This document shows, piece after piece, positions 21,315-59,965 of a stretch of 64,000 nucleotides of DNA (positions within the stretch are counted from its first letter, which is position 1; each line of letters starts with the position of its first letter). The stretch lies in the IMG/VR virus record IMGVR_UViG_3300040801_004034, positions 1 through 64,000 of that record; one strand, written 5' to 3'. Below the pieces are notes generated by a model. That model saw nothing but the letters and a program-made list of their open reading frames with translations. It had not been told where the DNA came from and ran no database searches. Position numbers and translations under genes: made by a program.

Positions 21315-22045
21315 TATATTTCTTCTAGTTTTACAAAACAAGCAAACGCATTAATTTCTTTGTCCATAACAATTGCATCTTTGTATAAATGCTCACTTAT
21401 ACATAAGATATAACGTTTGCTCTGTTCATCGCTAAGATCTTCACACTTGTAAACATGTTCCAAGTAACCTCTCATCAAGGCATGATAATCACCTTGGAAC
21501 TCGCTGTCATTCTCAATCAAATACTTTCTAAGCTTAAGAGATTTCTTACCTGTAATACATTCATGCATGAATGAGTATATGTTATTGAGATTGGTCAACG
21601 TTTGAATATCTAACTTACCATCAACACAATTTTTCTGTACTTCGTTAATGATCTTACGTATATCTGGAAAGTTATTTTTGATAAGCTTACCAAGCTTTGA
21701 TTTCTGCTCACCACTAACGGTAATACCTTCAGCTGATAAGATATGAGCAACCCTCTTAAGAACATCACCAATATCAGCTGTAAAGTCGAATGACTGTGTT
21801 CTACTCTGAAGGGCTGGAATGATCTTGTGCTTGTAATTAGCTGTAAGTATAAACCTGGTTACCTCACTATACTCTTCAATTGTATTTCGTAGGGCTTTTT
21901 GGCCATCTTTTGAGAGCCCGTCACAATTACTCGTTAATACTTTTTTATTTCCAACAAAGAAATTATGTGTTTCATCAACTGAAAGGTCATAAACTTTCTT
22001 CTTTATACCAATTTTTGTTATTTTTTTAATCTTTAATTTTTGCAT
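21311..22045 (-). CDS. gp44: clamp loader large subunit gp44, C-terminal half preceded by a 40-aa split-intein C fragment
   Basis: VYDLSVDETHNFFVGNKKVLTSN|CDGLSKDGQKALRNTIEEY…FILTAN…ALQSR…FPDIRKIIN. Confidence 0.92.
   Translation of the reverse strand: MQKLKIKKITKIGIKKKVYDLSVDETHNFFVGNKKVLTSNCDGLSKDGQKALRNTIEEYSEVTRFILTANYKHKIIPALQSRTQSFDFTADIGDVLKRVAHILSAEGITVSGEQKSKLGKLIKNNFPDIRKIINEVQKNCVDGKLDIQTLTNLNNIYSFMHECITGKKSLKLRKYLIENDSEFQGDYHALMRGYLEHVYKCEDLSDEQSKRYILCISEHLYKDAIVMDKEINAFACFVKLEEIY
21926..22045 (-). mobile_element. split intein C fragment (40 aa, ends T-S-N; +1 Cys)
   Basis: Intein blocks F/G: VYDLSV…HNF…SN|C. Confidence 0.9.
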
Positions 22046-22970
22046 ATGCCTTTCTCATCATTTTAAGTTGTAATAAATTATCATCTTCAAATTTTGTTTC
22101 GTCAATATATTGTATAATATTTTCTTCATTAATCCATTTAAATGACATTTCATTCTGATCACAATATTCTTGCAATGCTGTCATTTTGTCTATTTCTATA
22201 TTATATCTATTTTTCGGTTTAATTTCATACATTGTACGGGTTTCCGGATCATAAAAATCTGAAATGTATGTTTTGACATCTGTTTTGACTCGTATCGTTT
22301 CATACTCACAATGTTGGTTACATAACCAAAAGCATGCTTCCCACGAACTTCTAAATTTTTTAGTTGTTTCCCCAATTACTATTTTTGCATCCCAGTGTGT
22401 CCATGTATTAGTAATGTTTGGTGTGTATTCACCTGATGCGATTTTCCGTTTCATGGTTCGTGACATTTTCTTTGAACACATCTTTTTATGTTGTTTACCT
22501 TCTTCAGTTTCGTAGAATTTTTTCATACGTTTTGATTTTTTATTCCGCTGAGCTATACCTGCATCTGTCTTATTATATTGTTTAAGTGTTTTACGTATTT
22601 TTTCTATTTCAGATTCAGTTTTTGTGTAATCTCTTAGTTTTGTCCACACACGTTGTTTAATTTCTGATGGCGTATATTTTTTCCAACCGGTCCAACCTTT
22701 AAATGTTCCTGAATAAGAAAAACTATCTTCTGTTAACAAAATTCCAGAATATAAGCTATAGTGCGGTTCTTCGAGTAAAAACAAAAAATGATTAACACTG
22801 GGTTTATCCATCCAGTATACCAAGTTAGTAAACCACAACTTATGTGTATCATATACCTTTTTTGTTACAGGATTATAATAACGTACCTGTTTTTGTTTAT
22901 AATCTTGTACCAAATGTTTTATTGACTCTTTTGAATATGATTTTCTATTCGTTCGATTGCCACCTCTCAT
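22026..22970 (-). mobile_element. free-standing homing endonuclease (NUMOD3-like repeats plus TnsA-like PD-(D/E)XK domain) between the gp44 halves
   Basis: FRSSWE…YE…YISDFY…YEIKP; start placed at ATG 22970, 5 nt after TAAATA. Confidence 0.8.
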
Positions 22971-22974
22971 ATAA

Positions 22975-23316
22975 TTATTTATGACATTCAACAGTAATAC
23001 TATCAACCTTTGTTAAAATTGTATCTATTCCTTTTGAGATCATATCATCTAATTTCATCCTTTCAATCTCACCGTCTTCATTTTCAACATACCATTTATG
23101 ACTACCAGTACATATTATTTTTTCATCATTTTCAAATTCAAGTTCGTAACAATCTTGTTCACCCATGTAAAAATGGCTAAATGGTCTATACTCTATTCTG
23201 TCTTTTATTTGATTATATGACATTACAAGATCATTATCATGATCAAGATCTTTAATAGGTTGAGTACATTTTTTACCATCTCTCAATACATGGACTGGTG
23301 TATTCTCATCAAGACA
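22975..23316 (-). mobile_element. split intein N fragment (113 aa)
   Basis: Block A CLDENT and block B CTGSHKW, followed by a stop codon. Confidence 0.9.
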
Positions 23317-23625
23317 TTCATCAAGCACAATGATCTTCAAATTTTTATCAAACGATTTCGTCTGTGCAAATCCTACAACTTTACTTCTGATAGTATCAAT
23401 ACCGTTTTCGTCAGATGCATTGATATACATATAATCACATTGCAACTTACTAATGATGATTTTCGCAAGCGTTGTTTTACCAATACCTGGTGTACCACAA
23501 AATAACATATGCGGTATTTCAGATGTTATATTTTCAAAATACTTACGATTTTGATTTGACAACACTAAGTCGTCTAATGTTTGAGGTCTGTAACGTTCTG
23601 TCCACAATTGATTAAATTTATCCAT
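22975..23625 (-). CDS. gp44: clamp loader large subunit gp44, N-terminal half followed by a 113-aa split-intein N fragment
   Basis: WTERYRP, GTPGIGKTT, INASDENGID, IIVLDE|CLDENT…IICTGSHKW. Confidence 0.92.
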   Translation of the reverse strand: MDKFNQLWTERYRPQTLDDLVLSNQNRKYFENITSEIPHMLFCGTPGIGKTTLAKIIISKLQCDYMYINASDENGIDTIRSKVVGFAQTKSFDKNLKIIVLDECLDENTPVHVLRDGKKCTQPIKDLDHDNDLVMSYNQIKDRIEYRPFSHFYMGEQDCYELEFENDEKIICTGSHKWYVENEDGEIERMKLDDMISKGIDTILTKVDSITVECHK

Positions 23626-23631
23626 ATTGAT

Positions 23632-23659
23632 ATTATAGTTTATGTTTATGGTTGTTCAA
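23632..23659 (-). promoter_or_regulatory. early promoter TTGAAC-N16-TATAAT, 6 nt before ATG
   Basis: Read directly from the sequence. Confidence 0.75.
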
Positions 23660-23675
23660 TAGATTAAATATTTTT

Positions 23676-23912
23676 ATGTACAAAACAGAACTCGAACTAA
23701 TCAACGAAGCTTACTATAATAGATCAGAGCAGGAATCTGATGAAGTATCAACTCAATATGATGAAATGGTGCCAGTTTCAATGGAAGAAGTGGTACATTA
23801 CTACATCGAAATGGTATCAGATGTTGCCGGAGACGGTCGTGAAGCGACCGAGCTTCGCAAGTTTGCCAATTTCGTTGATAACAATAGTTACGAAATCAGA
23901 GCAAGCGGTTAA
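23676..23912 (+). CDS. small acidic late protein (LINEAYY motif)
   Basis: Start placed at ATG 23676, 5 nt after TAAATA. Confidence 0.6.
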   Translation: MYKTELELINEAYYNRSEQESDEVSTQYDEMVPVSMEEVVHYYIEMVSDVAGDGREATELRKFANFVDNNSYEIRASG

Positions 23913-24154
23913 ATCTTTTTATCTTTGTTTACAGAGAGATTATATGTCCTCAAAACCCATCCAATGGTATAAGCAACGTGCACAGGTGTTGTATACCAAT
24001 ACTCTGTAAGAACAAGCATCATGTACCAAAATGGTTGACTAACCCAACCGAGCACAACACCTATAATCTTCCACTTACGTTGCTCGCTCATAGAGCAAAT
24101 AAATGCAGCAGGACCAAAGATGCCGATACCGAGTTGTGCAATTAAATCAAGCAT
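23909..24154 (-). CDS. small membrane protein
   Basis: 81 aa with two to three hydrophobic segments; coupled to dut by a TGATG overlap. Confidence 0.6.
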   Translation of the reverse strand: MLDLIAQLGIGIFGPAAFICSMSEQRKWKIIGVVLGWVSQPFWYMMLVLTEYWYTTPVHVAYTIGWVLRTYNLSVNKDKKI

Positions 24155-24642
24155 CAGCGACCGCTTGATCCGAAACCGTGTGCGCCTCGTTCTGCCGGGG
24201 TAATTTGATCAGCCCATTCAACTGTTGTTACATAGTTCTTTTCAATCTTAATTTGCGCAACTTTATCACCTTTCTTATAGTGATATGGTATACCTGTCAG
24301 ATTGTATATTTTTACACCAAGATCAGACCTGTAGCCGGTGTCGATTTCCCCGAAGTGTGGTTGAATACCATGTTTAAACCCTAAACCAGACTTTGGTTTA
24401 ATAACAAATCCAAACCCTGGTGTAATGTTACCGACTGTAATACCTGTAGGTACAACAGCGTGCCCGACATCTACACCACCGGTTGTATCAACTTTACTAC
24501 GTGGTATTGTAGTATCCTCTACAGCAAACAGATCGTAACAATTATCATCATGATGGGCCTTTTCAGGTAATTTAGCATCATCATGGGTTTTTACAAATTC
24601 GATTTTACAATCAATACGCTGGATGTTATTTTCTTCATTCAT
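24154..24642 (-). CDS. dut: trimeric dUTPase
   Basis: YDLFA, PKSGLG, GEIDTGYRS, GDKVAQ, RGAHGFGSSG. Confidence 0.95.
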   Translation of the reverse strand: MNEENNIQRIDCKIEFVKTHDDAKLPEKAHHDDNCYDLFAVEDTTIPRSKVDTTGGVDVGHAVVPTGITVGNITPGFGFVIKPKSGLGFKHGIQPHFGEIDTGYRSDLGVKIYNLTGIPYHYKKGDKVAQIKIEKNYVTTVEWADQITPAERGAHGFGSSGR

Positions 24643-24648
24643 ACACCT

Positions 24649-24676
24649 ATTATACAGTATGTGTTTGGTTTATCAA
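24649..24676 (-). promoter_or_regulatory. early promoter TTGATA-N16-TATAAT, 6 nt before ATG
   Basis: Read directly from the sequence. Confidence 0.75.
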
Positions 24677-24697
24677 GATATCGACTAAATATAATAA

Positions 24698-25183
24698 ATG
24701 GATAATGATGAATTAGATGATTCAGTGAATGACCTTATAAGTCAATTACAATCAATAGATAACAATACAGGCGTACAGAAAAGCCAAAAAGAATTGACAC
24801 CTGAAGATGTGGAAAAATTTCTTGTTATGAGTTCTGGTAAGCTTGTTACAGACTCGCTTGATGTTGTAAGTACATTAAAGGAATACGTAAGAAGCTCGCC
24901 AAACCCGGAAGATGTAGAGGCACTTGCAAGAATACTTTCATCAAGTGCAGCAGCTATTGAAACATTGAACAAGATTCATATTAACGAAAGAAAAATCACT
25001 GCTCAACGACAAATCAAAGAGATGGATATTGAGAGTAAAAAAGAAATTGAAGAACAAAGATCTAATGCTGGTGCTCTTACGATAAATCGTGATGAATTAC
25101 TCGATTATATGATCTCTAAAGCTAAAGTAATCGACGCAGATGCAACAGATGCTGAGGTAGCTGAAATTAAAGATGCTACCTAA
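24698..25183 (+). CDS. probable terminase small subunit (gp16-like)
   Basis: 161 aa, helical; SPNPEDVEALARILSS…IETLNKIH and RDELL resemble the gp16 core; late motif upstream. Confidence 0.55.
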   Translation: MDNDELDDSVNDLISQLQSIDNNTGVQKSQKELTPEDVEKFLVMSSGKLVTDSLDVVSTLKEYVRSSPNPEDVEALARILSSSAAAIETLNKIHINERKITAQRQIKEMDIESKKEIEEQRSNAGALTINRDELLDYMISKAKVIDADATDAEVAEIKDAT

Positions 25184-27586: not shown

Positions 27587-27588
27587 TG

Positions 27589-27951: not shown

Positions 27952-27954
27952 ATG

Positions 27955-29259: not shown

Positions 29260-29269
29260 CTACTAATAT

Positions 29270-34825: not shown

Positions 34826-37219
34826 TTATGATGTACCGTTTATGATTTCATCAAAATTAGCACCTGTCTGGGTTGCCAAGAAGTTGACTAAGATAAATTC
34901 AGCTGCTCGAACTGGCTTGATATAAATATCAATCACTAGTTCATTCTGATCAATAACATCATTTGTGTTGTTACGTTCATCACAAATGATTCGGTAATCG
35001 TAAACACCTTCAGTATTCTTAGTAAGTTTGAAGATTGGATCAAGTACGTTGACAACTCGTGTTCGTGTAATCAATGTATTCGGTTCGAACACAAAGTACT
35101 TAGCTGTACGTCTTGTTGCCTTTTCTAACCATAAGAATAATCTACGAACATTAATTCTATCAAATGCACTTGGTTTTGCTTGCATTGTCTTCTGACCGAA
35201 TGTTACAAAACCTTCTCCTGGGAAGAATGCAACCGGGTTAACAGAAATTTTGTATAACTGATCACGTTGCTTCTGTTTAGGGTAGATTGCTAGATCATTA
35301 ACACCTGAAACTAGACCTCTTGTGAAACCTGCTGGTGCATACCAAGGCTGGAAGTTATCATCTGTGTTAGCCATCATAGCTGCCATTGTACCTGACATCG
35401 GTGCCCAGAACTGATCGTCTAGAACACTGTCATAAACCTTACCCCAGTTACCATATGTAGCTGCATAGCTTGTGTTAATTAAACTCATTACAGCTTGGAT
35501 TGGTTTAAGAACGTTTAATGAGAAGTTCTTTGATTTATCTTCAAGAGTCAAGAAATTGCTTCCTTGAACGAAGAACTGTCTTGGAAGATCACCAATGAAC
35601 ATATGATCTTTACGACGTTTTTCAGCAAAATCTGAGAAGCGTTGAAAGATCGTATTGTAATCTGCTCTGAAGGCTTTAGCTTCGTTTGAAATCTCAAGAA
35701 TATTAGATTTGTAGAACCCATCAATAGCACCAACTGCCATTGTATCGTCGAAATATTTCGTACCTGTTGTACGCTCTGTATATTCTGCTGTCGCGTTAAT
35801 AGTGGTAAGACCACCATCAACAGTGAGATCGATATCAAACATATCAATGTTTTCAACACTATCGAATAATCTATCAAGCTTGCGTGGAATAGAACCGAGT
35901 TTCTTTGTCTTAGGATTTGCTTCAGCATATGCACCGAGAGCATAGAGATTATCTGCTGCACCTAATGTTGCTGTTGCTTCAATATAAACATCCTTGATTG
36001 TCTCAGCTTGAGCTGATGTTGTTGCACCTAATGAACTGCTCAATGATACGATATTTGTATTAGCTGCAGATACATTAGCGAAACGAGATGATGTGAAACG
36101 CACCTTCTTCGTTGGCACTCCATTAATATCTAACCATGTGCTACCATTTTTGCTATTAACATATTCATTTGTCATCACAACAACATTCGGTGATGCATTT
36201 TCTCGTGTTTCAATTGAATAGCTGATTGCTGGACCACCATTTTGGTTGTTGATTTGTCTATGTGTATCAAATGAACCAACATATGTTTCTGAAATATTGT
36301 ATGCAAGCTTAATTGTATCAGAGGTGAATGGTGATTGGCTTAATTTAACAACACCGAGCGTTACTGTATCATCAAACTGATTCGATGAAATATCAAACAG
36401 GCTCACATTCTCCATAACTTCAGATATGCTATCATCACTTGAATCAAATGTATTAACTGTTGTTGCAGTATTATCAGAGATTGCTGATAGTGCGAAGTCA
36501 AGTCTTGAACTTGGAAGTGATGTGTATGCTGTTGTAAAGCCTGCTGATTGTGTAACAGTCTTAACACTGAGAATACCATCGAAATCTGTCGCAGGGTTTA
36601 GATTTGTGTTATCAATAGCACCAATATAAAAACCTTGAAACTTCTGATCAATTGTAGTCTGCCCTTTGTTAAGTACAATCATTGCTGCACCGCTTAAGTC
36701 TTGAACGCTATTGAATGATGTTTTCGGTGTATTTCCCCACTGGAAGTATTGAGGATTTTTACCAAGAATACCATAATATTCATCACGTGTAAGTTCAACG
36801 TGTGTTGGTTCACCAAGAATGTATGTCACATCTGTTGATTGTTCATCATACTCAGTAAGTGCTGTACCGAAGTTACTTGATAGTGTACTAACCGCACTAC
36901 ATGGATATGCAAGAGCACCATAATTGCTACCAAAACCAGCTCCTGTATCTTCACCGTATGGTAAGCGATATGTTAAAATATTTGCTGGTGAGTTGAAAAG
37001 TGGTCGAACTGAGTGATAAAAATATCTTTCAGCTGGTGTAGATGGTCTACCGTAAATTTGTTCAAATTCACTCTGGCTTGTAACTTGTATAACCTCATCA
37101 GTTGGCCCTTTAGATGCGAAACCTGGGATTAAAACGTTGGTGCCTGTTGGTAGATTTGCTCTAAGGGATAAATCAATCTCTCTCACCTCGACTCCGGGGC
37201 TCTGTATTTGTCTGCTCAT
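34826..37219 (-). CDS. gp18: tail sheath protein gp18
   Basis: SPGVEVREIDL, PWYAPAGFTRG, SAFDRINVRRLF, FEPN, CDERNN, IKPVRAAEFI. Confidence 0.97.
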   Translation of the reverse strand: MSRQIQSPGVEVREIDLSLRANLPTGTNVLIPGFASKGPTDEVIQVTSQSEFEQIYGRPSTPAERYFYHSVRPLFNSPANILTYRLPYGEDTGAGFGSNYGALAYPCSAVSTLSSNFGTALTEYDEQSTDVTYILGEPTHVELTRDEYYGILGKNPQYFQWGNTPKTSFNSVQDLSGAAMIVLNKGQTTIDQKFQGFYIGAIDNTNLNPATDFDGILSVKTVTQSAGFTTAYTSLPSSRLDFALSAISDNTATTVNTFDSSDDSISEVMENVSLFDISSNQFDDTVTLGVVKLSQSPFTSDTIKLAYNISETYVGSFDTHRQINNQNGGPAISYSIETRENASPNVVVMTNEYVNSKNGSTWLDINGVPTKKVRFTSSRFANVSAANTNIVSLSSSLGATTSAQAETIKDVYIEATATLGAADNLYALGAYAEANPKTKKLGSIPRKLDRLFDSVENIDMFDIDLTVDGGLTTINATAEYTERTTGTKYFDDTMAVGAIDGFYKSNILEISNEAKAFRADYNTIFQRFSDFAEKRRKDHMFIGDLPRQFFVQGSNFLTLEDKSKNFSLNVLKPIQAVMSLINTSYAATYGNWGKVYDSVLDDQFWAPMSGTMAAMMANTDDNFQPWYAPAGFTRGLVSGVNDLAIYPKQKQRDQLYKISVNPVAFFPGEGFVTFGQKTMQAKPSAFDRINVRRLFLWLEKATRRTAKYFVFEPNTLITRTRVVNVLDPIFKLTKNTEGVYDYRIICDERNNTNDVIDQNELVIDIYIKPVRAAEFILVNFLATQTGANFDEIINGTS

Positions 37220-37274
37220 ATACTATTATTTATATATTGCGGGATATTTTATTAGTACATGCTTAAATAATTTT

Positions 37275-38054
37275 ATGACACCAGGTAACGAAATTAACGA
37301 CATACCATATTATGGGTATATTTATATGTGGACGGATATTAAACGACAAATGTTCTATATAGGTTCTCATAAAGGCAGCTTTTATGATAGTTATAAAGCT
37401 AGCAATACAAGATTAAAACATGCTATTAGAAAGAGACCAGATACATTCACTGTAAGAGTTATAGAATATGTATGTTGTAATGACCGTCATGAGCTTCATA
37501 AGGTTGAAGAAAAATGGCTTAAATTTTATAATGTCGATGCAAATTATGCTTTCTATAATCATAAAAAAACAGCAAGTGGTGGATCAGGACCATCATCAAG
37601 AAAAGGTTTAACACATAAACAATTTTACGGTGATGATTACATCGATCCAAGAAAGGGTAAAACATTAGAACAAATTTATGGTGATGAAGCTACTGTTGTA
37701 AGGAACCGTTTATCTAAAACATTGCAAGATTATTATATCAAACATGGGCATGGTATCAAAAAAGGCATAACACATGACGGTGTTGATCCTCGTAAAGGTA
37801 AAACATTAGAAGAAATTTATGGTTACAAAAAATATGCAAATCCTCCTAAACCATTTAAGATCATGATATCAATACCTGGTCAGAATAGTGTATATGAAAC
37901 ATTCGAGTCCGAACGAGATTTTTTCAAACGTACATTGTTTGAAGCTACCACACTCGATAAAATTAAAAAAGATAAACGACATACTGTTAAGCGTAGATTA
38001 CCATCAACGAAACATAAATACCCTGTCGGTACTACGTTTTTGTTGTATCCTTAA
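37275..38054 (+). mobile_element. GIY-YIG (Seg-like) free-standing homing endonuclease
   Basis: GYIY…FYIGSH…R…E…FYN; two DPRKGKTLE[Q/E]IYG repeats; start 5 nt after TAAATA; antisense to its neighbours. Confidence 0.85.
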
Positions 38055-38674
38055 ATTAGTTCAATATATAGCTGCGAAAATGCAAACTCAAAAGATGAAT
38101 ACAATTCCGCAGAGTCGTCGTTATCATATGTGTATTCAATTGCACCAACAGATACAGGGAATGCATCTTTGTAAATAAATTTTACAACATTCTTATTATA
38201 TTCATCAATACCATAAACTGTAAATGTCGTCTGGTATTGTTGCGGTGGTGTTGCAGATCGTTTAATTTTACCAACCGTCGGTTTTTGTACGTTTGCAACA
38301 TTATCAGCATCATATACAGAATCTTTCATATCATTCAACAATGATAGCCATCTTTGTAACAACCAATAATTATAATATCTATTATCAACAGGAAATTGTA
38401 CAGTCACATTTTCGTACGGCTCTCTTGTATGTAATGATACCTTCATACTCTGACCAGCATATTTTAAAGTTTCAGAATTTACTTTTGTACTTGGCACTAT
38501 CGTACCCTTAATTGATAGCTGTAGCGAATCAGTTATAATTTCACCTTTATCACTCGTACCAAAATTTTTAGTATTGATATCTCTTAAAGCATCTGGTATA
38601 TCGATAACAAGTCTAAACTTGTCTGTACGTGCTTGGTTAAGCGTTGATTGAATTATCTCCCCCATTGTGTCCAC
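38051..38674 (-). CDS. tail tube terminator/completion protein (gp3-like, tube fold)
   Basis: VQFPVDNRYYNYWLLQRW…FIYKDAFPVSVGAIEY. Confidence 0.6.
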   Translation of the reverse strand: MDTMGEIIQSTLNQARTDKFRLVIDIPDALRDINTKNFGTSDKGEIITDSLQLSIKGTIVPSTKVNSETLKYAGQSMKVSLHTREPYENVTVQFPVDNRYYNYWLLQRWLSLLNDMKDSVYDADNVANVQKPTVGKIKRSATPPQQYQTTFTVYGIDEYNKNVVKFIYKDAFPVSVGAIEYTYDNDDSAELYSSFEFAFSQLYIELI

Positions 38675-39858
38675 CCTTGTTGTTCTAACATTGCCATATC
38701 ATCATCTTGCGACATACCATTATTTATAAGAGCTGGCATCACATCATAATGTTCTTCATTTTCATTACTCATATAACCACCTGGTCTCATAAACTCTTTG
38801 ATACCATAATCATGCTCTTCAAGTAGAAGTGGTTTGTTTGCCTCGTCTCTCTCAACCACTGTAAAATATTGTTCAATCACATCATCTATAAGAATGATTA
38901 AATTCCACATCAATCCAGCAACACGGTCATCGTAAAATCCTGATTTAGCTTGCCATTTCCCGTTCTTACCCTTTGTGAATGTTTTAAGTTCATTGATTAA
39001 ATGAATGTCACGGATACTTACAGCACGTACATTAGTGACCCAATGTCTCATGTTTGTTACACCAATATGTTTTGTGTTAGTATGACTAATTATACCATTT
39101 TGTATTGATTTACGTTTTGCTTTACTGGCGCCCCACGATACTATTTTTTCATAGTTGTGAACATTTTTAAGACCATCAACGACCTGTGCACCACTATTAT
39201 TACGTTCGACACAGACTAAAGGCATTCCCCAGTTTTGTAATATCTCATGTACTTTTTCAACAAAATTATACGGTGCTATTTCATTGTTATGATAACAAGC
39301 AACCTGTTTAATTTCTGTAAGATCTGTATAATCAAAAATTTGCACCACACTAGCATCACGCCCTATACCTTCACTTGTATCAACACTTGCAACATAGATT
39401 TTCTCATCACTTGGTTCTTCCCATATCTTATAATGGCCGTTATCATAAACATATTTTGGTTCATATGTGTTCGATTTCAAAAACTCGAACATTTCCTCAT
39501 TAATAGTCTGATCTGATGAATCAATCCACACACAATTATGGCTATACATATCATTTGTATAATATGCTTTAGTACCATCAACATTTACGATATCGTAAAC
39601 AACACGATCACCACATGGGTGTTTCGAAATAACTTTCTGTAAACCACTTAAGGTTTCCACACCTGTACCTAGTAGTATATCGTTAACTCGTTCAAAACCG
39701 TATTCCGTTTTCAACATATGGTCATACGATGCAGTTAGACTATATACACCACAGTTAATTGATATACATGGTTTTGTTTGCTTAGATATACCATAGAATG
39801 TTTTATATCCTTCTTCAGTCAATACTTTCGTATTGTTAATATTTTTAATGAATTCCAT
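38653..39858 (-). CDS. gp17: terminase large subunit gp17, C-terminal nuclease half preceded by a 108-aa split-intein C fragment
   Basis: VYDIVNV…YSHN|CVWIDSS…VDTSEGIGRD…CVERN…ELKTF…YDDRV. Confidence 0.92.
   Translation of the reverse strand: MEFIKNINNTKVLTEEGYKTFYGISKQTKPCISINCGVYSLTASYDHMLKTEYGFERVNDILLGTGVETLSGLQKVISKHPCGDRVVYDIVNVDGTKAYYTNDMYSHNCVWIDSSDQTINEEMFEFLKSNTYEPKYVYDNGHYKIWEEPSDEKIYVASVDTSEGIGRDASVVQIFDYTDLTEIKQVACYHNNEIAPYNFVEKVHEILQNWGMPLVCVERNNSGAQVVDGLKNVHNYEKIVSWGASKAKRKSIQNGIISHTNTKHIGVTNMRHWVTNVRAVSIRDIHLINELKTFTKGKNGKWQAKSGFYDDRVAGLMWNLIILIDDVIEQYFTVVERDEANKPLLLEEHDYGIKEFMRPGGYMSNENEEHYDVMPALINNGMSQDDDMAMLEQQGWTQWGR
39535..39858 (-). mobile_element. atypical split intein C fragment (108 aa, carries block B and blocks F/G)
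   Basis: KVLTEEG, TASYDH, VYD…SHN|C. Confidence 0.88.
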
Positions 39859-40721
39859 CTTTAGTAATATTTAGGTCGTTAATAGGAGTAATACGATCAT
39901 CATATATGATAACGAAATTACAGTTCAGTTCTTCCTGTATATCCTGTTGTCTCATATGGTCCTTTTTCATTTGACCTGGTGTAAGATGATATGGCTCATA
40001 CACCTCAAAAACAGTGTTCGTTTTATGACAATAACCGTCTGGAAAATAAGAGAGTACTCTAAAATTTCTATCTATTTTAATATTTTGATGTTGTTCATAA
40101 TAATCTAATATATCAGATTCTCTGTATCCTTTATTGATGAATGATGTTATACCTCTCTGTCGTTTTATATTTTGACATTTTTTACCATTTTGTTTATATT
40201 GTGAATTCCATGCGACGATGATATTCAAGATAATGTTTCCTCCAATCGTTCCCGTATGTATACATGAAATGTTCTCGTTTGTTTGGCATTATTCTGCACT
40301 TACCGCAGTATGCTTTTTCTTTAAATTGCTGTGTAGCAGCGTCCCATGTAATTTTCGAACCGCATTTACAATAGTATTTTCTCGGTATATCACCACCACA
40401 AAAACCTAATATAAACAAATGCGCAGAAAAACTCTTCGTTTTGAGTTTATCATGATATTCTATACCGTAATGTTGCACGCTTTTGAATAATGAAATATCA
40501 TCCTTTTGCATTTTTCTATTACCAGATTTACCGAGATATTTTTTCCAATTATCATCTTCTGATAGCATACTAATAGTTTTTTGCTTACTATATAATTGTG
40601 CTTGTTCTAATCGGTTTTTTTGTGTTGTATACCAATTTGTTGTTATTTCACTCTGGTTTTCATTTGCTTTCGCACTGTAGTCTTTCGTAAAGTTCTTCGA
40701 TTGTTTGGGTATATTGTTCAT
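39845..40721 (-). pseudogene. homing endonuclease between the terminase halves, broken into two overlapping frames (40194..40721 and 39845..40228)
   Basis: 5' ORF has CKCG…YCGKC zinc motifs; 3' ORF has a Vsr/PD-(D/E)XK-like YFPDGY…EVYEPYH…KD motif; 35-nt overlap. Confidence 0.65.
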
Positions 40722-40761
40722 TTTTATTACTTAATCGAACAAGAGTGTTTCCAGCGCAACA
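40660..40761 (-). mobile_element. atypically short split intein N fragment (33 aa)
   Basis: CCAGNTLVRL…TIEELYERL then stop; block A only. Confidence 0.88.
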
Positions 40762-41562
40762 ACCAAATTCTTGATCAAACGCTTCTTCACTATCCATACT
40801 AGCTTTTGTAAGCTTTACCCATGCATCATCTCTACCAGGTACTTCATTCCAAAGCACCTTATCACATGCCCAACCATTTGTGTTGTTTTCTGCACCAGTG
40901 AAAAGCTTGTAAAATAAGTTGTCAGTACCATTTGCAGTAGATGCTATAAAAATCTTAGATTTCTTAGAAGATGAAATAACAGGGTATACAGATGACCAGA
41001 ACGGCTTCATAATATGTGGTTCAACGAAAGCCATTTCGTCAATAATAAGAGTACCAACTGCTTGACCACGAGCTGCAGTACCTGTTGTTGTCGAAATATT
41101 AATCTGACTACCATTACTCAATTCAACTGATGTCTTACCATAAGCAACAACACCAGGCTTTAACCAGTTTGGCAATTCTTCGTATGCAAGTCTAACACGA
41201 CCGAGAATTTCAATAGCTGTATCCTCTTTATTTGCTACAATAAGAATACGTTGGTCTTTTTGAAAGCAAGCCACCCATAAAGCGTATATTGTAAAGAGTG
41301 TTGTTTTACCAATCTGTCTAGATGCTAATAATATAAAGAAACGATTTTTGACCATCTTCCTAAGAACCCGGTCCTGAAATTTATGAAGCGTGATAGGTTT
41401 TCTACCTTCGTCAACATTAATAATAGTAAAAAACTTTGAGAAAAAATGAATATCATTTTTTGCTTTAATCAGATCACGCATCATCTCTGGTGTATAATCG
41501 TGTTCAGCTCTCGCGGTAGGCAAATTAGGATTATTTTTGTATGACTGTGTATTTTGCGACAT
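40660..41562 (-). CDS. gp17: terminase large subunit gp17, N-terminal ATPase half followed by a 33-aa split-intein N fragment
   Basis: SRQIGKTT, ARG, IIDEMAF, ASTANG, WNEVPGRD, QEFG|CCAGNTLV…. Confidence 0.93.
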   Translation of the reverse strand: MSQNTQSYKNNPNLPTARAEHDYTPEMMRDLIKAKNDIHFFSKFFTIINVDEGRKPITLHKFQDRVLRKMVKNRFFILLASRQIGKTTLFTIYALWVACFQKDQRILIVANKEDTAIEILGRVRLAYEELPNWLKPGVVAYGKTSVELSNGSQINISTTTGTAARGQAVGTLIIDEMAFVEPHIMKPFWSSVYPVISSSKKSKIFIASTANGTDNLFYKLFTGAENNTNGWACDKVLWNEVPGRDDAWVKLTKASMDSEEAFDQEFGCCAGNTLVRLSNKNEQYTQTIEELYERLQCESK

Positions 41563-53482: not shown

Positions 53483-53490
53483 ATAACACA

Positions 53491-53518
53491 ATTATAGTGT
53501 ATAAAATTTACATATCCA
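53491..53518 (-). promoter_or_regulatory. early promoter TGGATA-N16-TATAAT, 8 nt before ATG
   Basis: Read directly from the sequence. Confidence 0.65.
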
Positions 53519-53813: not shown

Positions 53814-53853
53814 CGTATAATAGTATTTATACAATACTAAAAATTATTTGACT

Positions 53854-54210: not shown

Positions 54211-54211
54211 A

Positions 54212-54943: not shown

Positions 54944-55386
54944 ATCTTTTCTTGTTCTTTTAGCTCCGCAACTGTTTTGCTCAATTTGTTAACCCTTGAA
55001 AGAAGCTGTTGTAATGATGATTGTATATCATCAAGTGTACTAAACAACTGACCTTTTTCAGATTCATCAAAATGAAACTCAATTTGATTATCATTGACTG
55101 GTATATTTACACTTTCGGTTTGTTCAACAACTTGAGAAACAGGTTCAGCAATAGTAACAGTTTGTTCAGCTGGCTTTACAGCCGGTACCGGATCATTTAC
55201 CGGTACCGCTGTAGATGTTACAAACTTTTCAAATGCTTGTTTTGCTTTACCAGCACTAGGTTTCAATGTTGTACTCGGGGACGCAAGTAGTGAATCAGCT
55301 TCACGCGCATCCTTGTACATATTACCAAGAAACCCTGTAAGAGCAGCTTTAGCTTCTTCTTGACGTTTCTGTTCGTTGGGATCCAT
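54940..55386 (-). CDS. hypothetical coiled-coil protein
   Basis: Translationally coupled between gp32 and gp45. Confidence 0.65.
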   Translation of the reverse strand: MDPNEQKRQEEAKAALTGFLGNMYKDAREADSLLASPSTTLKPSAGKAKQAFEKFVTSTAVPVNDPVPAVKPAEQTVTIAEPVSQVVEQTESVNIPVNDNQIEFHFDESEKGQLFSTLDDIQSSLQQLLSRVNKLSKTVAELKEQEKI

Positions 55387-56255
55387 TATGAAAGATCAAT
55401 ACCATCAAGAAGCTCTTTCATCTTTGCGTCTTCTTCTTCATTAGAAGCTGCACTTGATTCATCAGGAGCTTTTTCTGATCGTGTGTTTGTTTCAGCATGC
55501 TCAGAAGGCTTGGTTGATTGATTCACTTCACTTGTATCAACCTGTGCCGGTGCACCTTCACAAATGATGTGTTCACGAACCATGTTTTGCAACTCTTCAG
55601 TTGTTTTAACCGGTTGTACACTTGTGAGATCAAATACACTACCAAGAATTTCTTTTTGTTTATCTTTTGTCATACCATCAATTTCTGATGGTAATGTAAA
55701 CTTCGATGAAACATATGTTGGGTAATCACCTTGTTGTTCAACTTTGATACGAAGATTAACACCTTCAGGTCCTAGATCAAATACACGACGACCGAGATCT
55801 TCTGCATCTTCACCACTAATAGCATCAACAACAATCTTATGAATTTGCTTACCATATCGAAGAATTTTTACCTTTCCGTTATTATCAGGATTTTTAGGAT
55901 CATCAATAACATAAACGTTCACAAGCCATTTTTCAGACCAACGAAGCTTTTCAGCTTTATTACGTTGTTCAGGTGTACCTGCTTTATATTTAAATTTGAT
56001 TTCACTAATTGGATCACGTTCACCGAATGTAACCGGGCTTAAAGCTGAAACATATTGTCCAGTTGCAAGACTATTCCATCCATTCATGTAATAATGGAAG
56101 AATGTCTTTTTTGGTTCTTTTGAGAATGGTAAAAGACGTACTAGGTATGTATTACCTGGTTCTGTCTTCAGAAAATCACCATAAGATGATGCTTTGTTAT
56201 CGTCTGCAAGAGCTGATTGAATGCTCTGGAATATATCGTTTGTTACGTTGCTCAT
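55386..56255 (-). CDS. gp32: single-stranded DNA-binding protein gp32
   Basis: VRLLP, NVYVIDDPKNPDNNGKVKILRYGKQI, YVSSKF, acidic tail. Confidence 0.9.
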   Translation of the reverse strand: MSNVTNDIFQSIQSALADDNKASSYGDFLKTEPGNTYLVRLLPFSKEPKKTFFHYYMNGWNSLATGQYVSALSPVTFGERDPISEIKFKYKAGTPEQRNKAEKLRWSEKWLVNVYVIDDPKNPDNNGKVKILRYGKQIHKIVVDAISGEDAEDLGRRVFDLGPEGVNLRIKVEQQGDYPTYVSSKFTLPSEIDGMTKDKQKEILGSVFDLTSVQPVKTTEELQNMVREHIICEGAPAQVDTSEVNQSTKPSEHAETNTRSEKAPDESSAASNEEEDAKMKELLDGIDLS

Positions 56256-56261
56256 AAATCT

Positions 56262-56289
56262 ATTATAAATACTAGGTCGCTGAAATCAA
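56262..56289 (-). promoter_or_regulatory. early promoter TTGATT-N16-TATAAT, 6 nt before ATG
   Basis: Read directly from the sequence. Confidence 0.75.
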
Positions 56290-56904
56290 TACAGCCTTGA
56301 CCTTTTCTACTATTTGTTTTGTTTTTCTACTTGAATAATATTTTGCTCGTATGTAGTTAATACGTGTAAAACATTCACTAAATTCTTGAAGTTCATTGTA
56401 CGAAAATTTTGATAAAACCTTCTCAACCGGAAATGCGAATAATGAGAAGAAATTTATTTTTCGTTGTTTTATATGTTTGAAAAATGCAGGGTATATTGCT
56501 TGTGGTTCAACGTGTGTTATATAATGTTTAATCGATATACCTTGCTCTTTACAATAATTACTGATAAACATAAAACTGTCTCTTACCTTTTCTGTTGTCA
56601 TATCACTATCAGGTTCGTTTAAAAGATATCGATCGTTGTATAATGTATATGTTCGAATTGCTCGTTGAGTCGTATAGAAATCCAACTCAACATATTTTTT
56701 TGTTTGAACAAAAAACGGAGCTTCAAAAAAAGACGTCATATCAACATCAGGGAATTTGAAAAACAGGTCATCAAGCCTTTTGAGTGCTAATTTAACAGTA
56801 TCATCAAGTTTAGTGAAATCTTTACGAGCTTTAAACGGTTTATCGTTTACTCTTTGAAGAACATAAAGGTATGTGTTATATATCTGTTGTTGTTTTAAGT
56901 CCAT
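56272..56904 (-). CDS. possible helicase loader (gp59-like)
   Basis: 210 aa, helical, immediately upstream of gp32 as in T4; assignment rests mainly on synteny. Confidence 0.4.
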   Translation of the reverse strand: MDLKQQQIYNTYLYVLQRVNDKPFKARKDFTKLDDTVKLALKRLDDLFFKFPDVDMTSFFEAPFFVQTKKYVELDFYTTQRAIRTYTLYNDRYLLNEPDSDMTTEKVRDSFMFISNYCKEQGISIKHYITHVEPQAIYPAFFKHIKQRKINFFSLFAFPVEKVLSKFSYNELQEFSECFTRINYIRAKYYSSRKTKQIVEKVKAVLISAT

Positions 56905-57178
56905 CTAACCCGCTAAATTTATTGAGATATTTTGTTACGTATTTACTCTTTGATACTGATGGTTCTGTGTGTATGAATTTTCTGATTGCTTCAAAATCGT
57001 TAGGTTCATCTATTTGCTGTTTATAAATGTCTCTAATCGTTTTATTTTCAAGTATCTTTAGAAACACCGTAGCAAAATTCATCTTTTTATCATATGTTAA
57101 AGATACGAATGAACAAAATGAGTAAAATGAATGATGAAACTCGTCTGTTTCAATATTGGTATATGGAATATATGACAT
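56876..57178 (-). CDS. hypothetical protein
   Basis: Coupled ORF in the replication operon. Confidence 0.6.
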   Translation of the reverse strand: MSYIPYTNIETDEFHHSFYSFCSFVSLTYDKKMNFATVFLKILENKTIRDIYKQQIDEPNDFEAIRKFIHTEPSVSKSKYVTKYLNKFSGLDGLKTTTDI

Positions 57179-58056
57179 TATAAAAGTTTGAGTGTTTTTG
57201 TTAGGTTCATCACGTTTTCATTTAATGCTACACCGGCAGCACATTCGTGACCACCACCTTGTCCTAATTTTTCCGCAAGCTCTCCCATATGTAATTTACA
57301 TTCGTTTGTGCTTCTTAGATATGCTTTCTTCATTTTAGGATTGATTATAAGTATAAAGTCGTATCCGTATTTTTCAAGCATTCTACCTGCTATTTCATTA
57401 GGCCATTTTTCTGCACAGCAGCTTAACATCTTAAACTGTTTATCACCAATAGGTATTTGTGTACCATACATTTTTGTCTGTACTATTATCTGATTGATTT
57501 CATTATGAATAATATGAAGCGCATTTTTATGAAATTTATTAAAGCCGACAAAACCTGTACCGAAATCATCAATAAATTTACCAAGTTTATCACCAGTATA
57601 CCCCCAGTAAATAAAATCTAAATCTTTACTAAACGGAAACTTAAGTGTGTAACTATCGTAATCATCGATTAGTGCAAATAGTGTTACCATTGGTTTTGAA
57701 AGCTTATCTTTAATTTTAAAAACATCACAAATTAGCTTTGTACAAGACGTTTCCATCTTCACAACTTGTTTAGCTATTTTCCAAACATGACTATTCTCAA
57801 CATGTTGTTCATGATGATCAATAACTACCACGTTTGGGTAGTCGCAAATATATGCATAATCATAAATCGGTAAATCACAAATAAACACTTTTGAATATTG
57901 TGAAAAATCAAATTGATCAAAATCCTTCTTGAAACTTTTAACAGTGGTAACCTTATAAACAACTTTATATGTATCTGCTGGCATAGCTTCACGGATTGCA
58001 AGGAATGACCCAGCTCCATCTAAATCTGCATCGACTATGACTAAAATCTTTTTCAT
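57178..58056 (-). CDS. DHH/DHHA1 phosphoesterase
   Basis: DADLDG, ICD, IDHH, DDYD, GGGHECAAG. Confidence 0.9.
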   Translation of the reverse strand: MKKILVIVDADLDGAGSFLAIREAMPADTYKVVYKVTTVKSFKKDFDQFDFSQYSKVFICDLPIYDYAYICDYPNVVVIDHHEQHVENSHVWKIAKQVVKMETSCTKLICDVFKIKDKLSKPMVTLFALIDDYDSYTLKFPFSKDLDFIYWGYTGDKLGKFIDDFGTGFVGFNKFHKNALHIIHNEINQIIVQTKMYGTQIPIGDKQFKMLSCCAEKWPNEIAGRMLEKYGYDFILIINPKMKKAYLRSTNECKLHMGELAEKLGQGGGHECAAGVALNENVMNLTKTLKLL

Positions 58057-58090
58057 TGTAAATAGTTATTTAATAATAGGTTCCTTCAGT

Positions 58091-58477
58091 TCAACTCATT
58101 CTACCTAGTTCATCCGAAACGTCATCAATATCGTTTCTTCTTGCAGCAAGATTATCATCCTCTTCAATCCAAAGCGTGTCATAATTGATTCTCATTGCAT
58201 TACTACCGAAATTCGGTCCGAATCTATTTTTAACTGAACCTATGTTGATAATACCTAGTTCTTTATCTTCAGGAGATTGAAAAATATTGTAAATAGCATC
58301 ACAAGTAGCAGCAAGACCGTATGATTCACTGATTGTATCAAGCCCTGGTGAATTTTGACCATATCCACTATTATGTGTTAGAATTCCATTTGCAAAAAAT
58401 AAATTATCATCCGATACAGATATATCTACTGTTTCAATTTCACCTATTTCTTGTATTTCTACTATTTCATCAACCAT
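58091..58477 (-). CDS. gp41: replicative helicase gp41, C-terminal part preceded by a 36-aa split-intein C fragment
   Basis: TVDISVSDDNLFFANGILTHN|SGYG…SESYGLAATCD…KNRFG; start placed at ATG 58477. Confidence 0.9.
   Translation of the reverse strand: MVDEIVEIQEIGEIETVDISVSDDNLFFANGILTHNSGYGQNSPGLDTISESYGLAATCDAIYNIFQSPEDKELGIINIGSVKNRFGPNFGSNAMRINYDTLWIEEDDNLAARRNDIDDVSDELGRMS
58370..58477 (-). mobile_element. split intein C fragment (gp41-1-like, 36 aa; +1 Ser)
   Basis: Blocks F/G ending THN|S. Confidence 0.9.
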
Positions 58478-59660
58478 AAAGGTGTTGTTTACATTTTTCA
58501 ATTGTTTCATCAGGTTTTTCATTATAATCTTTCTCCCATATTACCAGAACATCAAATCCTAGATTTTTTATTATAGCTTGTTTTTCTGCATCTTCAATCC
58601 AAATTTGCTCACATGTAAGATCATTATAAGGATTAGGTTTATCAGTGTTACGGTAAATATCAGGGTTACCATGGAATACATCACCATTAAATTCAATAAC
58701 TTTTTTTCTATCAACATTTACATAATCATAAAAGAAGCTTCGTTTTTTATGTTGTTTATGAAATTCTTTGTTTTTGATCGCATAATATGTATTTTCAGTG
58801 TTACTATCAATCAACTCAAATAGTTGTTGTGATATTTTTGAGAAACCAGAGACCCCTATAGCGCTGTGTGTACACCAGTGTAAATATTTTCTTTCACCGA
58901 GTTCAATACCGTATTTACTAATATAAAAATCTTTTGTATTCCTAAATCTGCATAGTTCTATATGTTTTTCATATTTTTCAGCGCCTTCTTTTTCACCATA
59001 CTTCCTTTTAAAAGACTGCAGCGATTTATGATCTTTAGCTTGTTTCATTTTTTTCGGACCATCTATAACACCATATTTTTTAATAAACCCTTCTTTTGAA
59101 CTACCGAAATGTAGTTTCATTATTTTTTCGTTGTATAATATTACACCTTCATCTTCTCCGTATTTTTGTATATAACTCTCTAACGTATGTTTTTTCTTTT
59201 CCTTTTCTCTCATCAATCTGAATCTTTTACGACCATCAGCATCACCGTATTTTTTTACAAATCGTTCAATCGTTTTATTACCTTTATTATTTTCACACTT
59301 TTCAGCAAATTTCTCACGTCCTTTTATTTCCCCATATAATTTAACATAATTATCAATAGTATGTGCTTTTTTATTACACGCTTGTTCATACCGTTTTTTA
59401 CCTTCCTTTTCTCCAAACTTTAATATACAACCTTCTAGTGTTGATGCAGATTTATACATTTTATTATATTTTTCTATCTTTTTAAGACGATCTAGCCACG
59501 GAAACGGTATATCATACTCGCAAAATCTTGCTAACTGAACCATTTGCATGATAGATAGTTTTTCATAAACATCTTCAATAATTTGTATTTGTTTCTGCTG
59601 TTGCAGGTCAGGGGTTTTATTACAATGTTTTTTCCAGTTTTTTGACTTGTAGTATACCAT
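58470..59660 (-). mobile_element. free-standing Vsr/DUF559-like homing endonuclease between the gp41 halves
   Basis: About seven KYGExEG repeats; FYD…VIEFNGDVFHGNP…VLVIWEKDY; ATG 59660 lies 6 nt after TAAATA. Confidence 0.85.
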
Positions 59661-59695
59661 AAACATTATTTATGACTGCTACACAGATTAACATG

Positions 59696-59965
59696 CTATT
59701 TCTCAGTAAAAAGTTTATCACCTACCTCTAAACCAGTATTGATTGATTTTACAAGCTGATTGGATACTGGAAACATATGTTTACCGCTACAAATAATTTC
59801 TTTACCAGACTTTAACTTTATTTTATAACATTTTTGCGTTTCTACAGGATAAACATATCTCACATCAACATATTTTTTTGACCCTAATATTTTATCTCCT
59901 ATTTTTAAATCAACAATGCGTTTATTACCATTTGGTGTTTTCACCACAGTATTGATATCCAAGCA
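59696..59965 (-). mobile_element. split intein N fragment (gp41-1-like, 89 aa)
   Basis: Block A CLDINT.V.TP.G and block B IICSGKHMFP, followed by a stop codon. Confidence 0.9.

What the first reader, a model, noticed from the sequence alone, without database searches (positions are those of the whole stretch)
21926..59965. Opposite charge polarity of the two canonical split inteins could prevent cross-splicing
Counted by hand (K+R minus D+E): clamp-loader IntN is about -12 and its IntC about +7 (MQKLKIKKITKIGIKKK…). Helicase IntN is about +8 and its IntC -9, with no Lys or Arg (MVDEIVEIQEIGEIETVD…). Known: split-intein halves associate largely electrostatically, usually an acidic IntN with a basic IntC as in cyanobacterial DnaE. 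Inference: the helicase pair is charge-inverted, so non-cognate IntN/IntC combinations would repel. The terminase intein is separated by its different split position. Together these could avoid clamp-loader/helicase chimeras.
Basis: partly seen in the sequence, partly recalled or inferred. Interest (0 to 1): 0.85.

Follow-up and report, generated by a model that had tools for sequence, protein, structure and literature searches.

The report
Mirror-charged split inteins in one phage
A T4-like phage genome has three genes cut in two by split inteins, and two of these inteins carry mirror-image charges; the pattern is real, but it is an inherited and already published trait of those intein families, not a shown adaptation against mis-joining.

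Summary
The clamp-loader IntN is -12 and its IntC +7. The helicase IntN is +8 and its IntC -9, with no Lys or Arg. The charges sit at aligned positions of the two long pairing strands, with K and E swapped between the two inteins.

The polarity is a family trait. The helicase intein is a gp41-1 homologue (PDB 6QAZ, E 8e-17). Dassa et al. 2009 already reported gp41 inteins as N-positive/C-negative, opposite to IMPDH, NrdA, NrdJ and DnaE inteins. Beyer et al. 2019 showed the same in the crystal structure.

- In 51 distinct gp41-site split inteins from viral contigs, no IntC is net positive (median -7).
- These IntCs are equally acidic whether or not the neighbouring UvsX gene carries a split intein.
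- The clamp-loader family keeps its acidic-N/basic-C strands in contiguous relatives.
- It also keeps them in a 216-kb relative whose helicase has no intein.

Opposite polarity is not needed for orthogonality. Published same-polarity pairs do not cross-splice. One metagenomic polymerase gene carries two adjacent same-polarity canonical split inteins.

Like-charge repulsion between non-cognate halves is physically plausible but probably a by-product. The clamp-loader split intein appears to be a new member of a known kind. Interest is low to moderate.

The parts
23317..23625 (-). Clamp-loader (gp44/RFC-like AAA+) N-extein, 103 aa, ending in Walker B ...VLDE
   Evidence: Pfam AAA 6.9e-9. Aligns to RFCS 1iqp residues 13-118 and T4 gp44 3u5z residues 15-113.
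22978..23316 (-). Clamp-loader IntN, 113 aa, net -12; starts with Cys1, has TGSH block B and an acidic strand CYELEFENDEKI
   Evidence: Pfam Intein_splicing 2e-4. Intein-N HMM 3.6e-23.
22026..22970 (-). Free-standing endonuclease-like ORF between the clamp-loader halves (first ATG at 22970; overlaps the IntC start by 20 nt)
   Evidence: phrog_15427 endonuclease 1.2e-12 and phrog_22417 1.3e-20. Weak REase-fold Pfam hit. A homologous ORF sits at the same place in L289.
21926..22045 (-). Clamp-loader IntC, 40 aa, net +7, ends ...LTSN before Cys+1
   Evidence: The family alignment has LTSN|CDG invariant.
21311..21925 (-). Clamp-loader C-extein (204 aa plus stop), begins CDGLS
   Evidence: Pfam Gp44_lid 2.6e-9. 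Aligns to RFCS residues 120-215 and T4 gp44 residues 121-279, colinear with the N-extein.
59966..61030 (-). gp41/DnaB-like helicase N-extein, 355 aa, ending ...SQINR
   Evidence: Pfam DnaB_C 1.9e-18. Intact relatives continue ...QLNR|SGY....
59699..59965 (-). Helicase IntN, 89 aa, net +8, with basic strand CYKIKLKSGKEI
   Evidence: PDB gp41-1 intein 6QAZ/6RIZ, E about 1e-16. Charges.
58470..59666 (-). Free-standing ORF (398 aa) between the helicase halves, probably a Vsr-like homing endonuclease
   Evidence: phrog_22677 2.2e-39. Weak MTES_1575 and DUF559 hits in the last 40 aa, below the Pfam cut-offs.
58370..58477 (-). Helicase IntC, 36 aa, net -9, no K or R, ends ...ILTHN before Ser+1
   Evidence: Alternative starts at 58510 and 58522 would give net -6.
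58091..58369 (-). Helicase C-extein (92 aa plus stop), begins SGYGQN
40762..41562 (-). Large terminase N-extein (267 aa)
   Evidence: Pfam Terminase_6N 2.1e-14. phrog_5989 2.8e-47.
40663..40761 (-). Terminase short IntN, 33 aa, net -1 (atypical split)
39845..40721 (-). Two overlapping ORFs in different frames (40194..40721 and 39845..40228) between the terminase halves; possibly an endonuclease gene in two pieces
   Evidence: Only a weak DUF7487 hit. No PHROG hit.
39535..39858 (-). Terminase long IntC, 108 aa, net -1, ends ...YSHN before Cys+1
   Evidence: PDB 6dsl_B consensus atypical TerL intein CatC, E 9e-5 over residues 3-107.
38653..39534 (-). Large terminase C-extein (nuclease half)
   Evidence: phrog_24361 terminase 1.4e-9.

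Best explanation
The window is the first 64 kb of a 221-kb T4-like phage contig. Three essential genes are 'fractured': clamp loader, replicative helicase and large terminase. In each, a split intein has a free-standing endonuclease-like ORF between its halves.

Each canonical pair reassembles by the known capture-and-collapse route. A long charged strand of IntN (beta3) zips electrostatically onto an oppositely charged strand at the start of IntC (beta6). The HINT fold then forms and the exteins are ligated.

The sign of this zipper is arbitrary and fixed by descent in each intein family. gp41-type inteins are N-positive/C-negative. The clamp-loader family is N-negative/C-positive, like the UvsX, DnaE, NrdJ and IMPDH inteins. 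A phage that acquires one of each therefore shows opposite polarity automatically.

Like-charge repulsion of non-cognate halves follows and may add a kinetic margin. Orthogonality, however, is already expected from about 30% sequence identity.

Shown here: the anatomy, the charges, the homology and the family-wide conservation. Inferred: trans-splicing activity, the electrostatic mechanism in these particular inteins, and the absence of selection for inversion.
For: - Exact charges and aligned, inverted strand residues.
- Helicase IntN is homologous to gp41-1.
- Published polarity of gp41-1 and gp41-8 against IMPDH-1, NrdA-2, NrdJ-1 and DnaE, and in the crystal structure.
- Capture-and-collapse description.
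- 51 distinct gp41-site split pairs: IntC from -11 to 0, none positive. IntN/IntC charge correlation r = -0.74; strand beta3/beta6 r = -0.79.
- The clamp-loader family keeps VYEIEFEN and LKIKKITKL in the split members and in one of the two contiguous forms, L086.
- Each family occurs without the other with unchanged polarity. Close helicase relatives lack the intein. Only 10 clamp-loader-intein loci were found against 262 gp41-type loci, sharing one contig. The 216-kb scaffold has a split clamp loader (-10/+3) and an intact 437-aa helicase.
- gp41 IntC charge is the same with or without a neighbouring split UvsX intein.
- The two window inteins are only 30% (IntN) and 33% (IntC) identical.
Against: - No splicing or binding was measured.
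- 'Single split intein' status could not be established for any whole genome, because only about 10-20 kb around each hit could be read.
- The correlations are not corrected for phylogeny.
- Polarity does flip within the gp41-site family: L015 site 1, L031, L080, and proteins P0002 and P0012. The sign is therefore evolvable and could in principle respond to selection.
- Several multi-intein loci do combine an inverted, a normal and an atypically split intein: the window, L015 and L274.
Confidence: 0.75

Rival explanations
1. Adaptive inversion. The helicase intein's charges were selected, or are maintained, as inverted because a second canonical split intein shares the cytoplasm. This prevents clamp-loader/helicase chimeras.
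For: - Both non-cognate combinations are like-charged.
- Whole-fragment charge swapping suppressed cross-reactivity of Npu DnaE, and charge engineering made NpuDnaB-derived split inteins orthogonal.
- In L015, two gp41-family inteins 15 residues apart in one helicase have opposite strand polarity.
- gp41 (inverted) often sits next to a UvsX split intein of normal polarity.
Against: - The inversion is universal in the gp41 family, whatever the context. It was present in the first gp41 inteins described.
- Same-polarity natural inteins are orthogonal in vitro and in vivo.
- Same-polarity canonical split inteins c and d co-reside at adjacent junctions of one polymerase gene.
- A strand-only charge swap left Npu DnaE cross-reactive.
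- Basic-IntC variants P0002 and P0012 occur in helicases with no second intein in the C piece.
Confidence: 0.1
2. Ecological sorting. No intein changes its charges, but invasion by a new split intein succeeds only if it is orthogonal to residents in polarity, split position or sequence. Multi-intein phages therefore end up with assorted classes.
For: - The window holds one normal, one inverted and one atypically split intein.
- The L274 polymerase holds an inverted (a), an atypical (b) and two normal (c, d) inteins.
- The 216-kb relative holds a normal clamp-loader intein plus an atypical TerL intein at another site.
Against: - c and d in L274 share polarity and split type.
- Too few whole genomes could be read to test for any excess of mixed classes.
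- With gp41 inteins always inverted and nearly all other families normal, mixed sets arise without any filter.
Confidence: 0.1
3. The charges serve solubility or disorder of the unassembled fragments only, and play no part in choosing the partner.
For: Beyer et al. suggest that the strand charges may chiefly make the fragments more soluble, since the swap did not change Npu DnaE partner choice.
Against: - There is a strong negative correlation between IntN and IntC charges within one family (r = -0.74 to -0.79).
- Salt-bridge networks are seen in the gp41-1 crystal structure and in models.
- Solubility alone would not require complementary signs.
Confidence: 0.05

Closest known systems
gp41-1 (and gp41-8) naturally split inteins from GOS metagenomes (Dassa 2009; PDB 6QAZ/6RIZ, Beyer 2019/2020)
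   Same: - Host protein: gp41/DnaB helicase.
- Canonical split: IntN about 88 aa, IntC about 36 aa.
- A free-standing endonuclease ORF lies between the halves.
- N-positive/C-negative strand charges.
- IntN matches at E 8e-17.
   Different: - The insertion register is 3 residues upstream: QxNR|intein|SGY here against TRSGY|intein|SSS in gp41-1.
- It is much more polarised: +8/-9 here against about 0/-3 for gp41-1-like copies.
- Block F reads DDNLFF rather than GNHLFY.
Cyanobacterial DnaE split inteins (Npu, Ssp) and the IMPDH-1, NrdJ-1 and NrdA-2 inteins
   Same: The clamp-loader intein has their polarity (acidic IntN, basic IntC) and the canonical split point.
   Different: - The host protein is a phage gp44/RFC-like clamp loader, with insertion inside Walker B (DE|CD).
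- There is no detectable close sequence relative in the PDB.
- The penultimate residue is Ser, not His.
Cyanobacterial PolIII gamma (DnaX) and archaeal RFC inteins (Novikova 2016)
   Same: These are clamp-loader AAA+ hosts. The cyanobacterial site is described as immediately after Walker B.
   Different: Those are described as cellular inteins. One search shows no statement that they are split or carry a free-standing endonuclease gene. The relationship of the inteins themselves was not tested.
Atypical TerL split inteins AceL-TerL, GOS-TerL and Cat-TerL
   Same: - Host: large terminase.
- Short IntN (25-37 aa) and long IntC (104-115 aa), against 33 and 108 here.
- Cys1 and Cys+1.
- IntC matches CatC 6dsl_B.
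   Different: Sequence similarity is only moderate (E 9e-5). Whether the insertion site is the same was not compared.
Engineered charge-swapped or charge-introduced orthogonal split inteins (Shah 2011 as cited by Beyer; Beyer 2019)
   Different: Those are designed variants of a single intein, where the sequence is otherwise identical. Here the two inteins are already only about 30% identical.

Membership tests
Canonical (class 1) split intein | Cys/Ser at intein position 1, directly after the N-extein | tested here: met
   Clamp ...VLDE|CLDENT and helicase ...QINR|CLDINT.
Canonical (class 1) split intein | Block B T/SxxH motif in IntN | tested here: met
   Clamp IICTGSHKW and helicase IICSGKHMF, the latter aligned to gp41-1 IICSEEHLF.
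Canonical (class 1) split intein | C-terminal Asn followed by a Cys/Ser/Thr +1 nucleophile | tested here: met
   Clamp ...LTSN|C (penultimate Ser, invariant in 26 family members). Helicase ...LTHN|S.
Canonical (class 1) split intein | Break at the homing-endonuclease insertion point, giving IntN of about 90-110 aa and IntC of about 35-50 aa | tested here: met
   113/40 aa and 89/36 aa. Dassa 2009 gives ranges of 88-105 and 33-54 aa.
Canonical (class 1) split intein | The exteins join into a colinear full-length homologue | tested here: met
   Clamp exteins align to RFCS 13-118 and 120-215 and to T4 gp44. Helicase: intact relatives read ...QLNR SGY....
Canonical (class 1) split intein | Protein trans-splicing activity | not testable with these tools
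   Needs expression of the halves.
gp41-1 class of split inteins | Sequence homology to gp41-1 | tested here: met
   6qaz_A E 8.4e-17, residues 2-87 against 4-88.
gp41-1 class of split inteins | Same insertion point in the helicase (allelic) | tested here: not met
   Shifted by 3 residues: NR|...|SGY against TRSGY|...|SSS. Both registers are common among the 80 loci.
gp41-1 class of split inteins | Positive IntN strand and negative IntC strand | tested here: met
   beta3 +3 and beta6 -6. Published for gp41-1 and gp41-8.
Fractured gene (Dassa 2009) | The two gene halves lie on the same strand with a free-standing ORF between them | tested here: met
   All three loci.
Fractured gene (Dassa 2009) | The intervening ORF is a homing endonuclease (GIY-YIG or Vsr-like) | tested here: inconclusive
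   - Helicase gap: DUF559 and MTES_1575 hits, below cut-off.
- Clamp gap: PHROG 'endonuclease' 1.2e-12.
- Terminase gap: no usable hit.
Atypical TerL split intein (AceL/GOS/Cat-TerL) | Short IntN (25-37 aa), long IntC (104-115 aa), TerL host, Cys1/Cys+1 | tested here: met
   33/108 aa, G|CCAGNT... and ...YSHN|C. CatC hit E 9e-5. Terminase PHROGs. Published sizes.

The most novel reading that the evidence does not exclude
Phage genomes, and single genes, that carry several split inteins may be assembled from mutually non-interfering classes: normal polarity, inverted polarity and an atypical split point. That would be a natural 'orthogonality code', maintained by selection against chimeric or exon-skipped products.

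The window (one of each class), the two-intein helicase in L015 (opposite strand polarity 15 residues apart) and the five-piece polymerase in L274 (inverted, atypical, normal, normal) would be instances.
Probability: 0.1. Interest if true: 0.55.

Novelty: new member of a known kind. Interest (0 to 1): 0.3.

Why it matters
If charge polarity really were selected to keep co-resident split inteins apart, it would show that natural selection uses the same rule that protein engineers use to build orthogonal ligation tools. It would also predict which inteins can share a genome.

As it stands, the value is more modest:
- The window offers a ready-made natural set of three probably orthogonal split inteins: strongly polarised normal, strongly polarised inverted, and atypical.
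- It includes a clamp-loader split intein that the literature searches here did not find described.
- The gp41-site family offers a gradient of natural charge variants for studying electrostatic steering.

Tried and rejected
- **Cultured phages.** A megablast of 24 kb found only a 40-bp hit, to Methylophilales phage Melnitz. A tblastn with the helicase C piece found exteins only, so no INPHARED phage has this intein and isolate genomes could not be used.
- **Co-residence by contig name.** Only the window's own contig is shared between the gp41-intein and clamp-loader-intein scans.
- **Helicase-extein scan.** It did show that close relatives lack the intein.
- **UvsX-intein scan.** It was dominated by extein matches and was uninformative for co-residence.
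- **Look-up of P0012 (basic IntC variant).** The contig lacks the IntN, so compensatory charges in its partner could not be checked.
- **Record names of P0003, P0006 and P0049.** They gave no shared record.
- **Contig walk.** Walking the 216-kb GROS21 scaffold worked. A reciprocal walk on a helicase-intein genome was not possible within the look-up cap.
- **Clamp IntN against the PDB.** No significant relative was found.
- **Structure prediction of cognate and non-cognate complexes.** Not attempted: the tool folds single, unaltered chains only.


Full report
**What is in the window**

All relevant genes lie on the - strand. Three genes are each present as two ORFs with another ORF between them.

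1. *Clamp loader (gp44/RFC-like).*
   - N piece 22975..23625, an endonuclease-like ORF 22026..22970, and C piece 21311..22045.
   - The N-extein (103 aa) aligns to P. furiosus RFCS residues 13-118 and T4 gp44 residues 15-113, ending in Walker B ...LDE.
   - The C-extein continues at RFCS residue 120 and gp44 residue 121. The intein therefore sits inside DE|CD.
2. *Helicase (gp41/DnaB-like).*
   - N piece 59696..61030, a 398-aa ORF 58470..59666, and a C piece starting at 58477.
   - The 398-aa ORF has weak Vsr-like/DUF559 similarity.
   - Intact relatives read ...QLNR SGY... across the junction.
3. *Large terminase.* N piece 40660..41562, two overlapping ORFs, and C piece 38653..39858.

An intein-N HMM and a C-motif scan find no further intein in the window. 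The window is bases 1-64000 of IMG/VR contig 3300040801_004034, 221 kb. GC content is about 34%. The gene content is T4-like: sheath, gp32, primase, dUTPase and baseplate genes.

**The observation**

| Fragment | Length | Net charge |
|---|---|---|
| Clamp IntN | 113 aa | -12 |
| Clamp IntC | 40 aa | +7 |
| Helicase IntN | 89 aa | +8 |
| Helicase IntC | 36 aa | -9 (no Lys or Arg) |
| Terminase IntN | 33 aa | -1 |
| Terminase IntC | 108 aa | -1 |

- Each of the four large charges lies in the 1.3-5.6% tail of same-length fragments of the window's own proteins.
- The two inteins align at 30% identity in IntN and 33% in IntC.
- Their charged residues fall in the same columns with inverted sign. 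In IntN, CYELEFENDEKI aligns with CYKIKLKSGKEI. In IntC, KIKKITKIGIKKK aligns with EIVEIQEIGEIET.
- By homology to gp41-1 these are the two long antiparallel strands, beta3 and beta6. They form the 'charge zipper' seen in the crystal structure.
- One caveat concerns the helicase IntC start. Upstream in-frame ATGs exist, one with a GGGAG site, and the public gene call is 139 aa. With the longest start the IntC would be net -6. Family N-termini favour 58477.

**What is already known**

- Dassa et al. 2009 described these 'fractured genes'. They stated that in gp41-1 and gp41-8 the N-intein strand is positive and the C-intein strand negative. In IMPDH-1, NrdA-2, NrdJ-1 and the cyanobacterial DnaE inteins it is the reverse. 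They also reported a terminase intein broken at an unusual point.
- Beyer et al. confirmed the reversed distribution in the 1.0 Å gp41-1 structure and used it to engineer orthogonal inteins. Swapping the beta3/beta6 charges alone left Npu DnaE cross-reactive. Whole-fragment swaps, and charge engineering of NpuDnaB, did reduce cross-reaction.
- The window's helicase IntN matches gp41-1 at E 8e-17.
- The terminase IntC matches the consensus atypical TerL intein CatC at E 9e-5. The 33/108 aa halves with Cys1/Cys+1 fit AceL-TerL (25/104 aa) and GOS-TerL (37/115 aa).
- I found no description of a phage clamp-loader split intein in the papers searched.

**Family survey**

*gp41-site family.*
- A scan of IMG/VR with an alignment of gp41-type IntCs gave 262 relatives. 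I analysed the best 80.
- Among 51 distinct split pairs, IntC (last 36 aa) ranges from -11 to 0 with median -7, and none is positive.
- IntN ranges from -5 to +10 with median +3.
- 44 of 51 pairs have beta3 positive and beta6 negative.
- IntN and IntC charges are negatively correlated (r = -0.74; strands r = -0.79). This is not corrected for phylogeny.
- The window's pair ranks 9th of 51 in polarisation. gp41-1 proper is only about 0/-3.

*Clamp-loader family.*
- A scan for the clamp-loader intein found only 10 loci.
- Their IntCs are +1 to +7 and their IntNs -12 to +1.
- The strands VYEIEFEN and LKIKKITKL are conserved, including in the contiguous mini-intein form L086.

Polarity is thus a lineage property in both families.

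**Independence from co-residence**

- Only the window's contig appears in both scans. The clamp-loader scan was not capped. So the other 79 gp41-intein contigs do not carry that intein in the sequence they hold. These include contigs of 164, 127 and 125 kb.
- Where the neighbouring UvsX gene is visible, gp41 IntC charge averages -5.6 when UvsX carries a split intein (n = 5). It averages -5.5 when UvsX is intact (n = 20), Mann-Whitney p = 1.0.
- I walked a 216-kb syntenic metagenomic scaffold. It has the split clamp loader (IntN -10, IntC +3) with the same intervening ORF. Its helicase is an uninterrupted 437-aa gene and its UvsX is intact.
- The closest helicase relatives, at 43-55% identity, mostly lack the intein.

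**Is opposite polarity needed?**

- Published matrices show gp41-1, gp41-8, IMPDH-1, NrdJ-1 and Npu DnaE to be mutually orthogonal in vivo and in vitro. This includes pairs of the same polarity.
- In another study, 15 of 16 assorted inteins were mutually orthogonal.
- In nature, contig 3300044953_000875 carries a PolIII-alpha-like gene in five pieces. Its inteins c (-12/0) and d (-11/+4) are both canonical and of the same polarity. They are 36% identical in IntN and sit at adjacent junctions.

- Both non-cognate pairs in the window are like-charged.
- Polarity can flip within the gp41-site family: L015 site 1, L031, L080, P0002 and P0012.
- In L015, two family members 15 residues apart in one helicase have opposite strand polarity.
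- The five-piece polymerase also contains one inverted and one atypically split intein.

These are anecdotes, and they are compatible with chance assortment of families.

**Verdict**

- The inversion shows no dependence on a second split intein in the data that could be read.
- Opposite polarity is not required for orthogonality.
- The most likely account is electrostatic steering of cognate halves, with a historically fixed sign in each family and non-cognate repulsion as a by-product.
- Novelty is limited to a new clamp-loader member of the fractured-gene and split-intein kind, and to a natural three-intein set.

Noticed in passing
L092 1-8129 and L274 5800-9050 (IMGVR_UViG_3300044953_000875): A PolIII-alpha/DnaE-like gene is cut into five pieces by four split inteins. 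Intein a is inverted (+3/-10). Intein b is split near its C-terminus (IntN 170 aa, IntC about 12 aa), with an endonuclease ORF between its halves. Inteins c and d are canonical, of the same normal polarity, with no intervening ORF.
   Followed up: partly
L015 2966-5354 (IMGVR_UViG_3300048694_001270): This helicase carries two gp41-family inteins 15 residues apart. One is a contiguous mini-intein at the usual site with reversed charges (N part -9, last 36 aa +5). The other is a split intein at a second site (...ISE|C ... KN|SIG) with IntN +13 and IntC -8.
   Followed up: partly
L024, L048, L055, L057, L067 (upstream of the helicase): The adjacent UvsX/RecA-like gene is fractured by a canonical split intein of normal polarity (IntN -5 to -17). 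Its strands (CYEIEFEDG and MKIKSIxxxGxK) closely resemble those of the clamp-loader intein.
   Followed up: partly
window 59960-59970 and 58365-58375; loci L003-L082: gp41-site inteins use two insertion registers 3 residues apart: QxNR|intein|SGY, as in the window, and TRSGY|intein|SSS, as in gp41-1.
   Followed up: partly
window 21926-21940; alignment A3: The clamp-loader intein ends ...LTSN, with Ser rather than the usual His before the terminal Asn. This is invariant in all 26 family members aligned.
   Followed up: no
L292 16530-19649 (GROS21 scaffold_30): In a syntenic relative the terminase is fractured at a different site, the Walker B region. The intein is again atypical: IntN 42 aa, IntC 114 aa apparently ending in Gln. 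A GIY-YIG-like ORF lies between the halves.
   Followed up: partly
window 37137-38054 (+): A free-standing homing-endonuclease-like ORF on the opposite strand, between the tail sheath and tail tube genes (phrog_314; the N-terminus looks GIY-YIG-like).
   Followed up: no
window 39845-40721 (-): The gap between the terminase halves holds two overlapping ORFs in different frames, with no clear family. This may be a frameshifted or decaying endonuclease gene.
   Followed up: no
window 58477-58522 (-): The helicase IntC start is ambiguous. There are in-frame ATGs at 58522 (with GGGAG upstream), 58510 (the public gene call, 139 aa) and 58477 (the family-consistent start). All lie inside the end of the endonuclease-like ORF.
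   Followed up: yes
proteins P0002, P0012: These are gp41-site split IntCs with a basic start (MITPSKITSIKKIG...) and Cys+1, the reverse of the family norm. Their IntN partners could not be recovered.
   Followed up: partly
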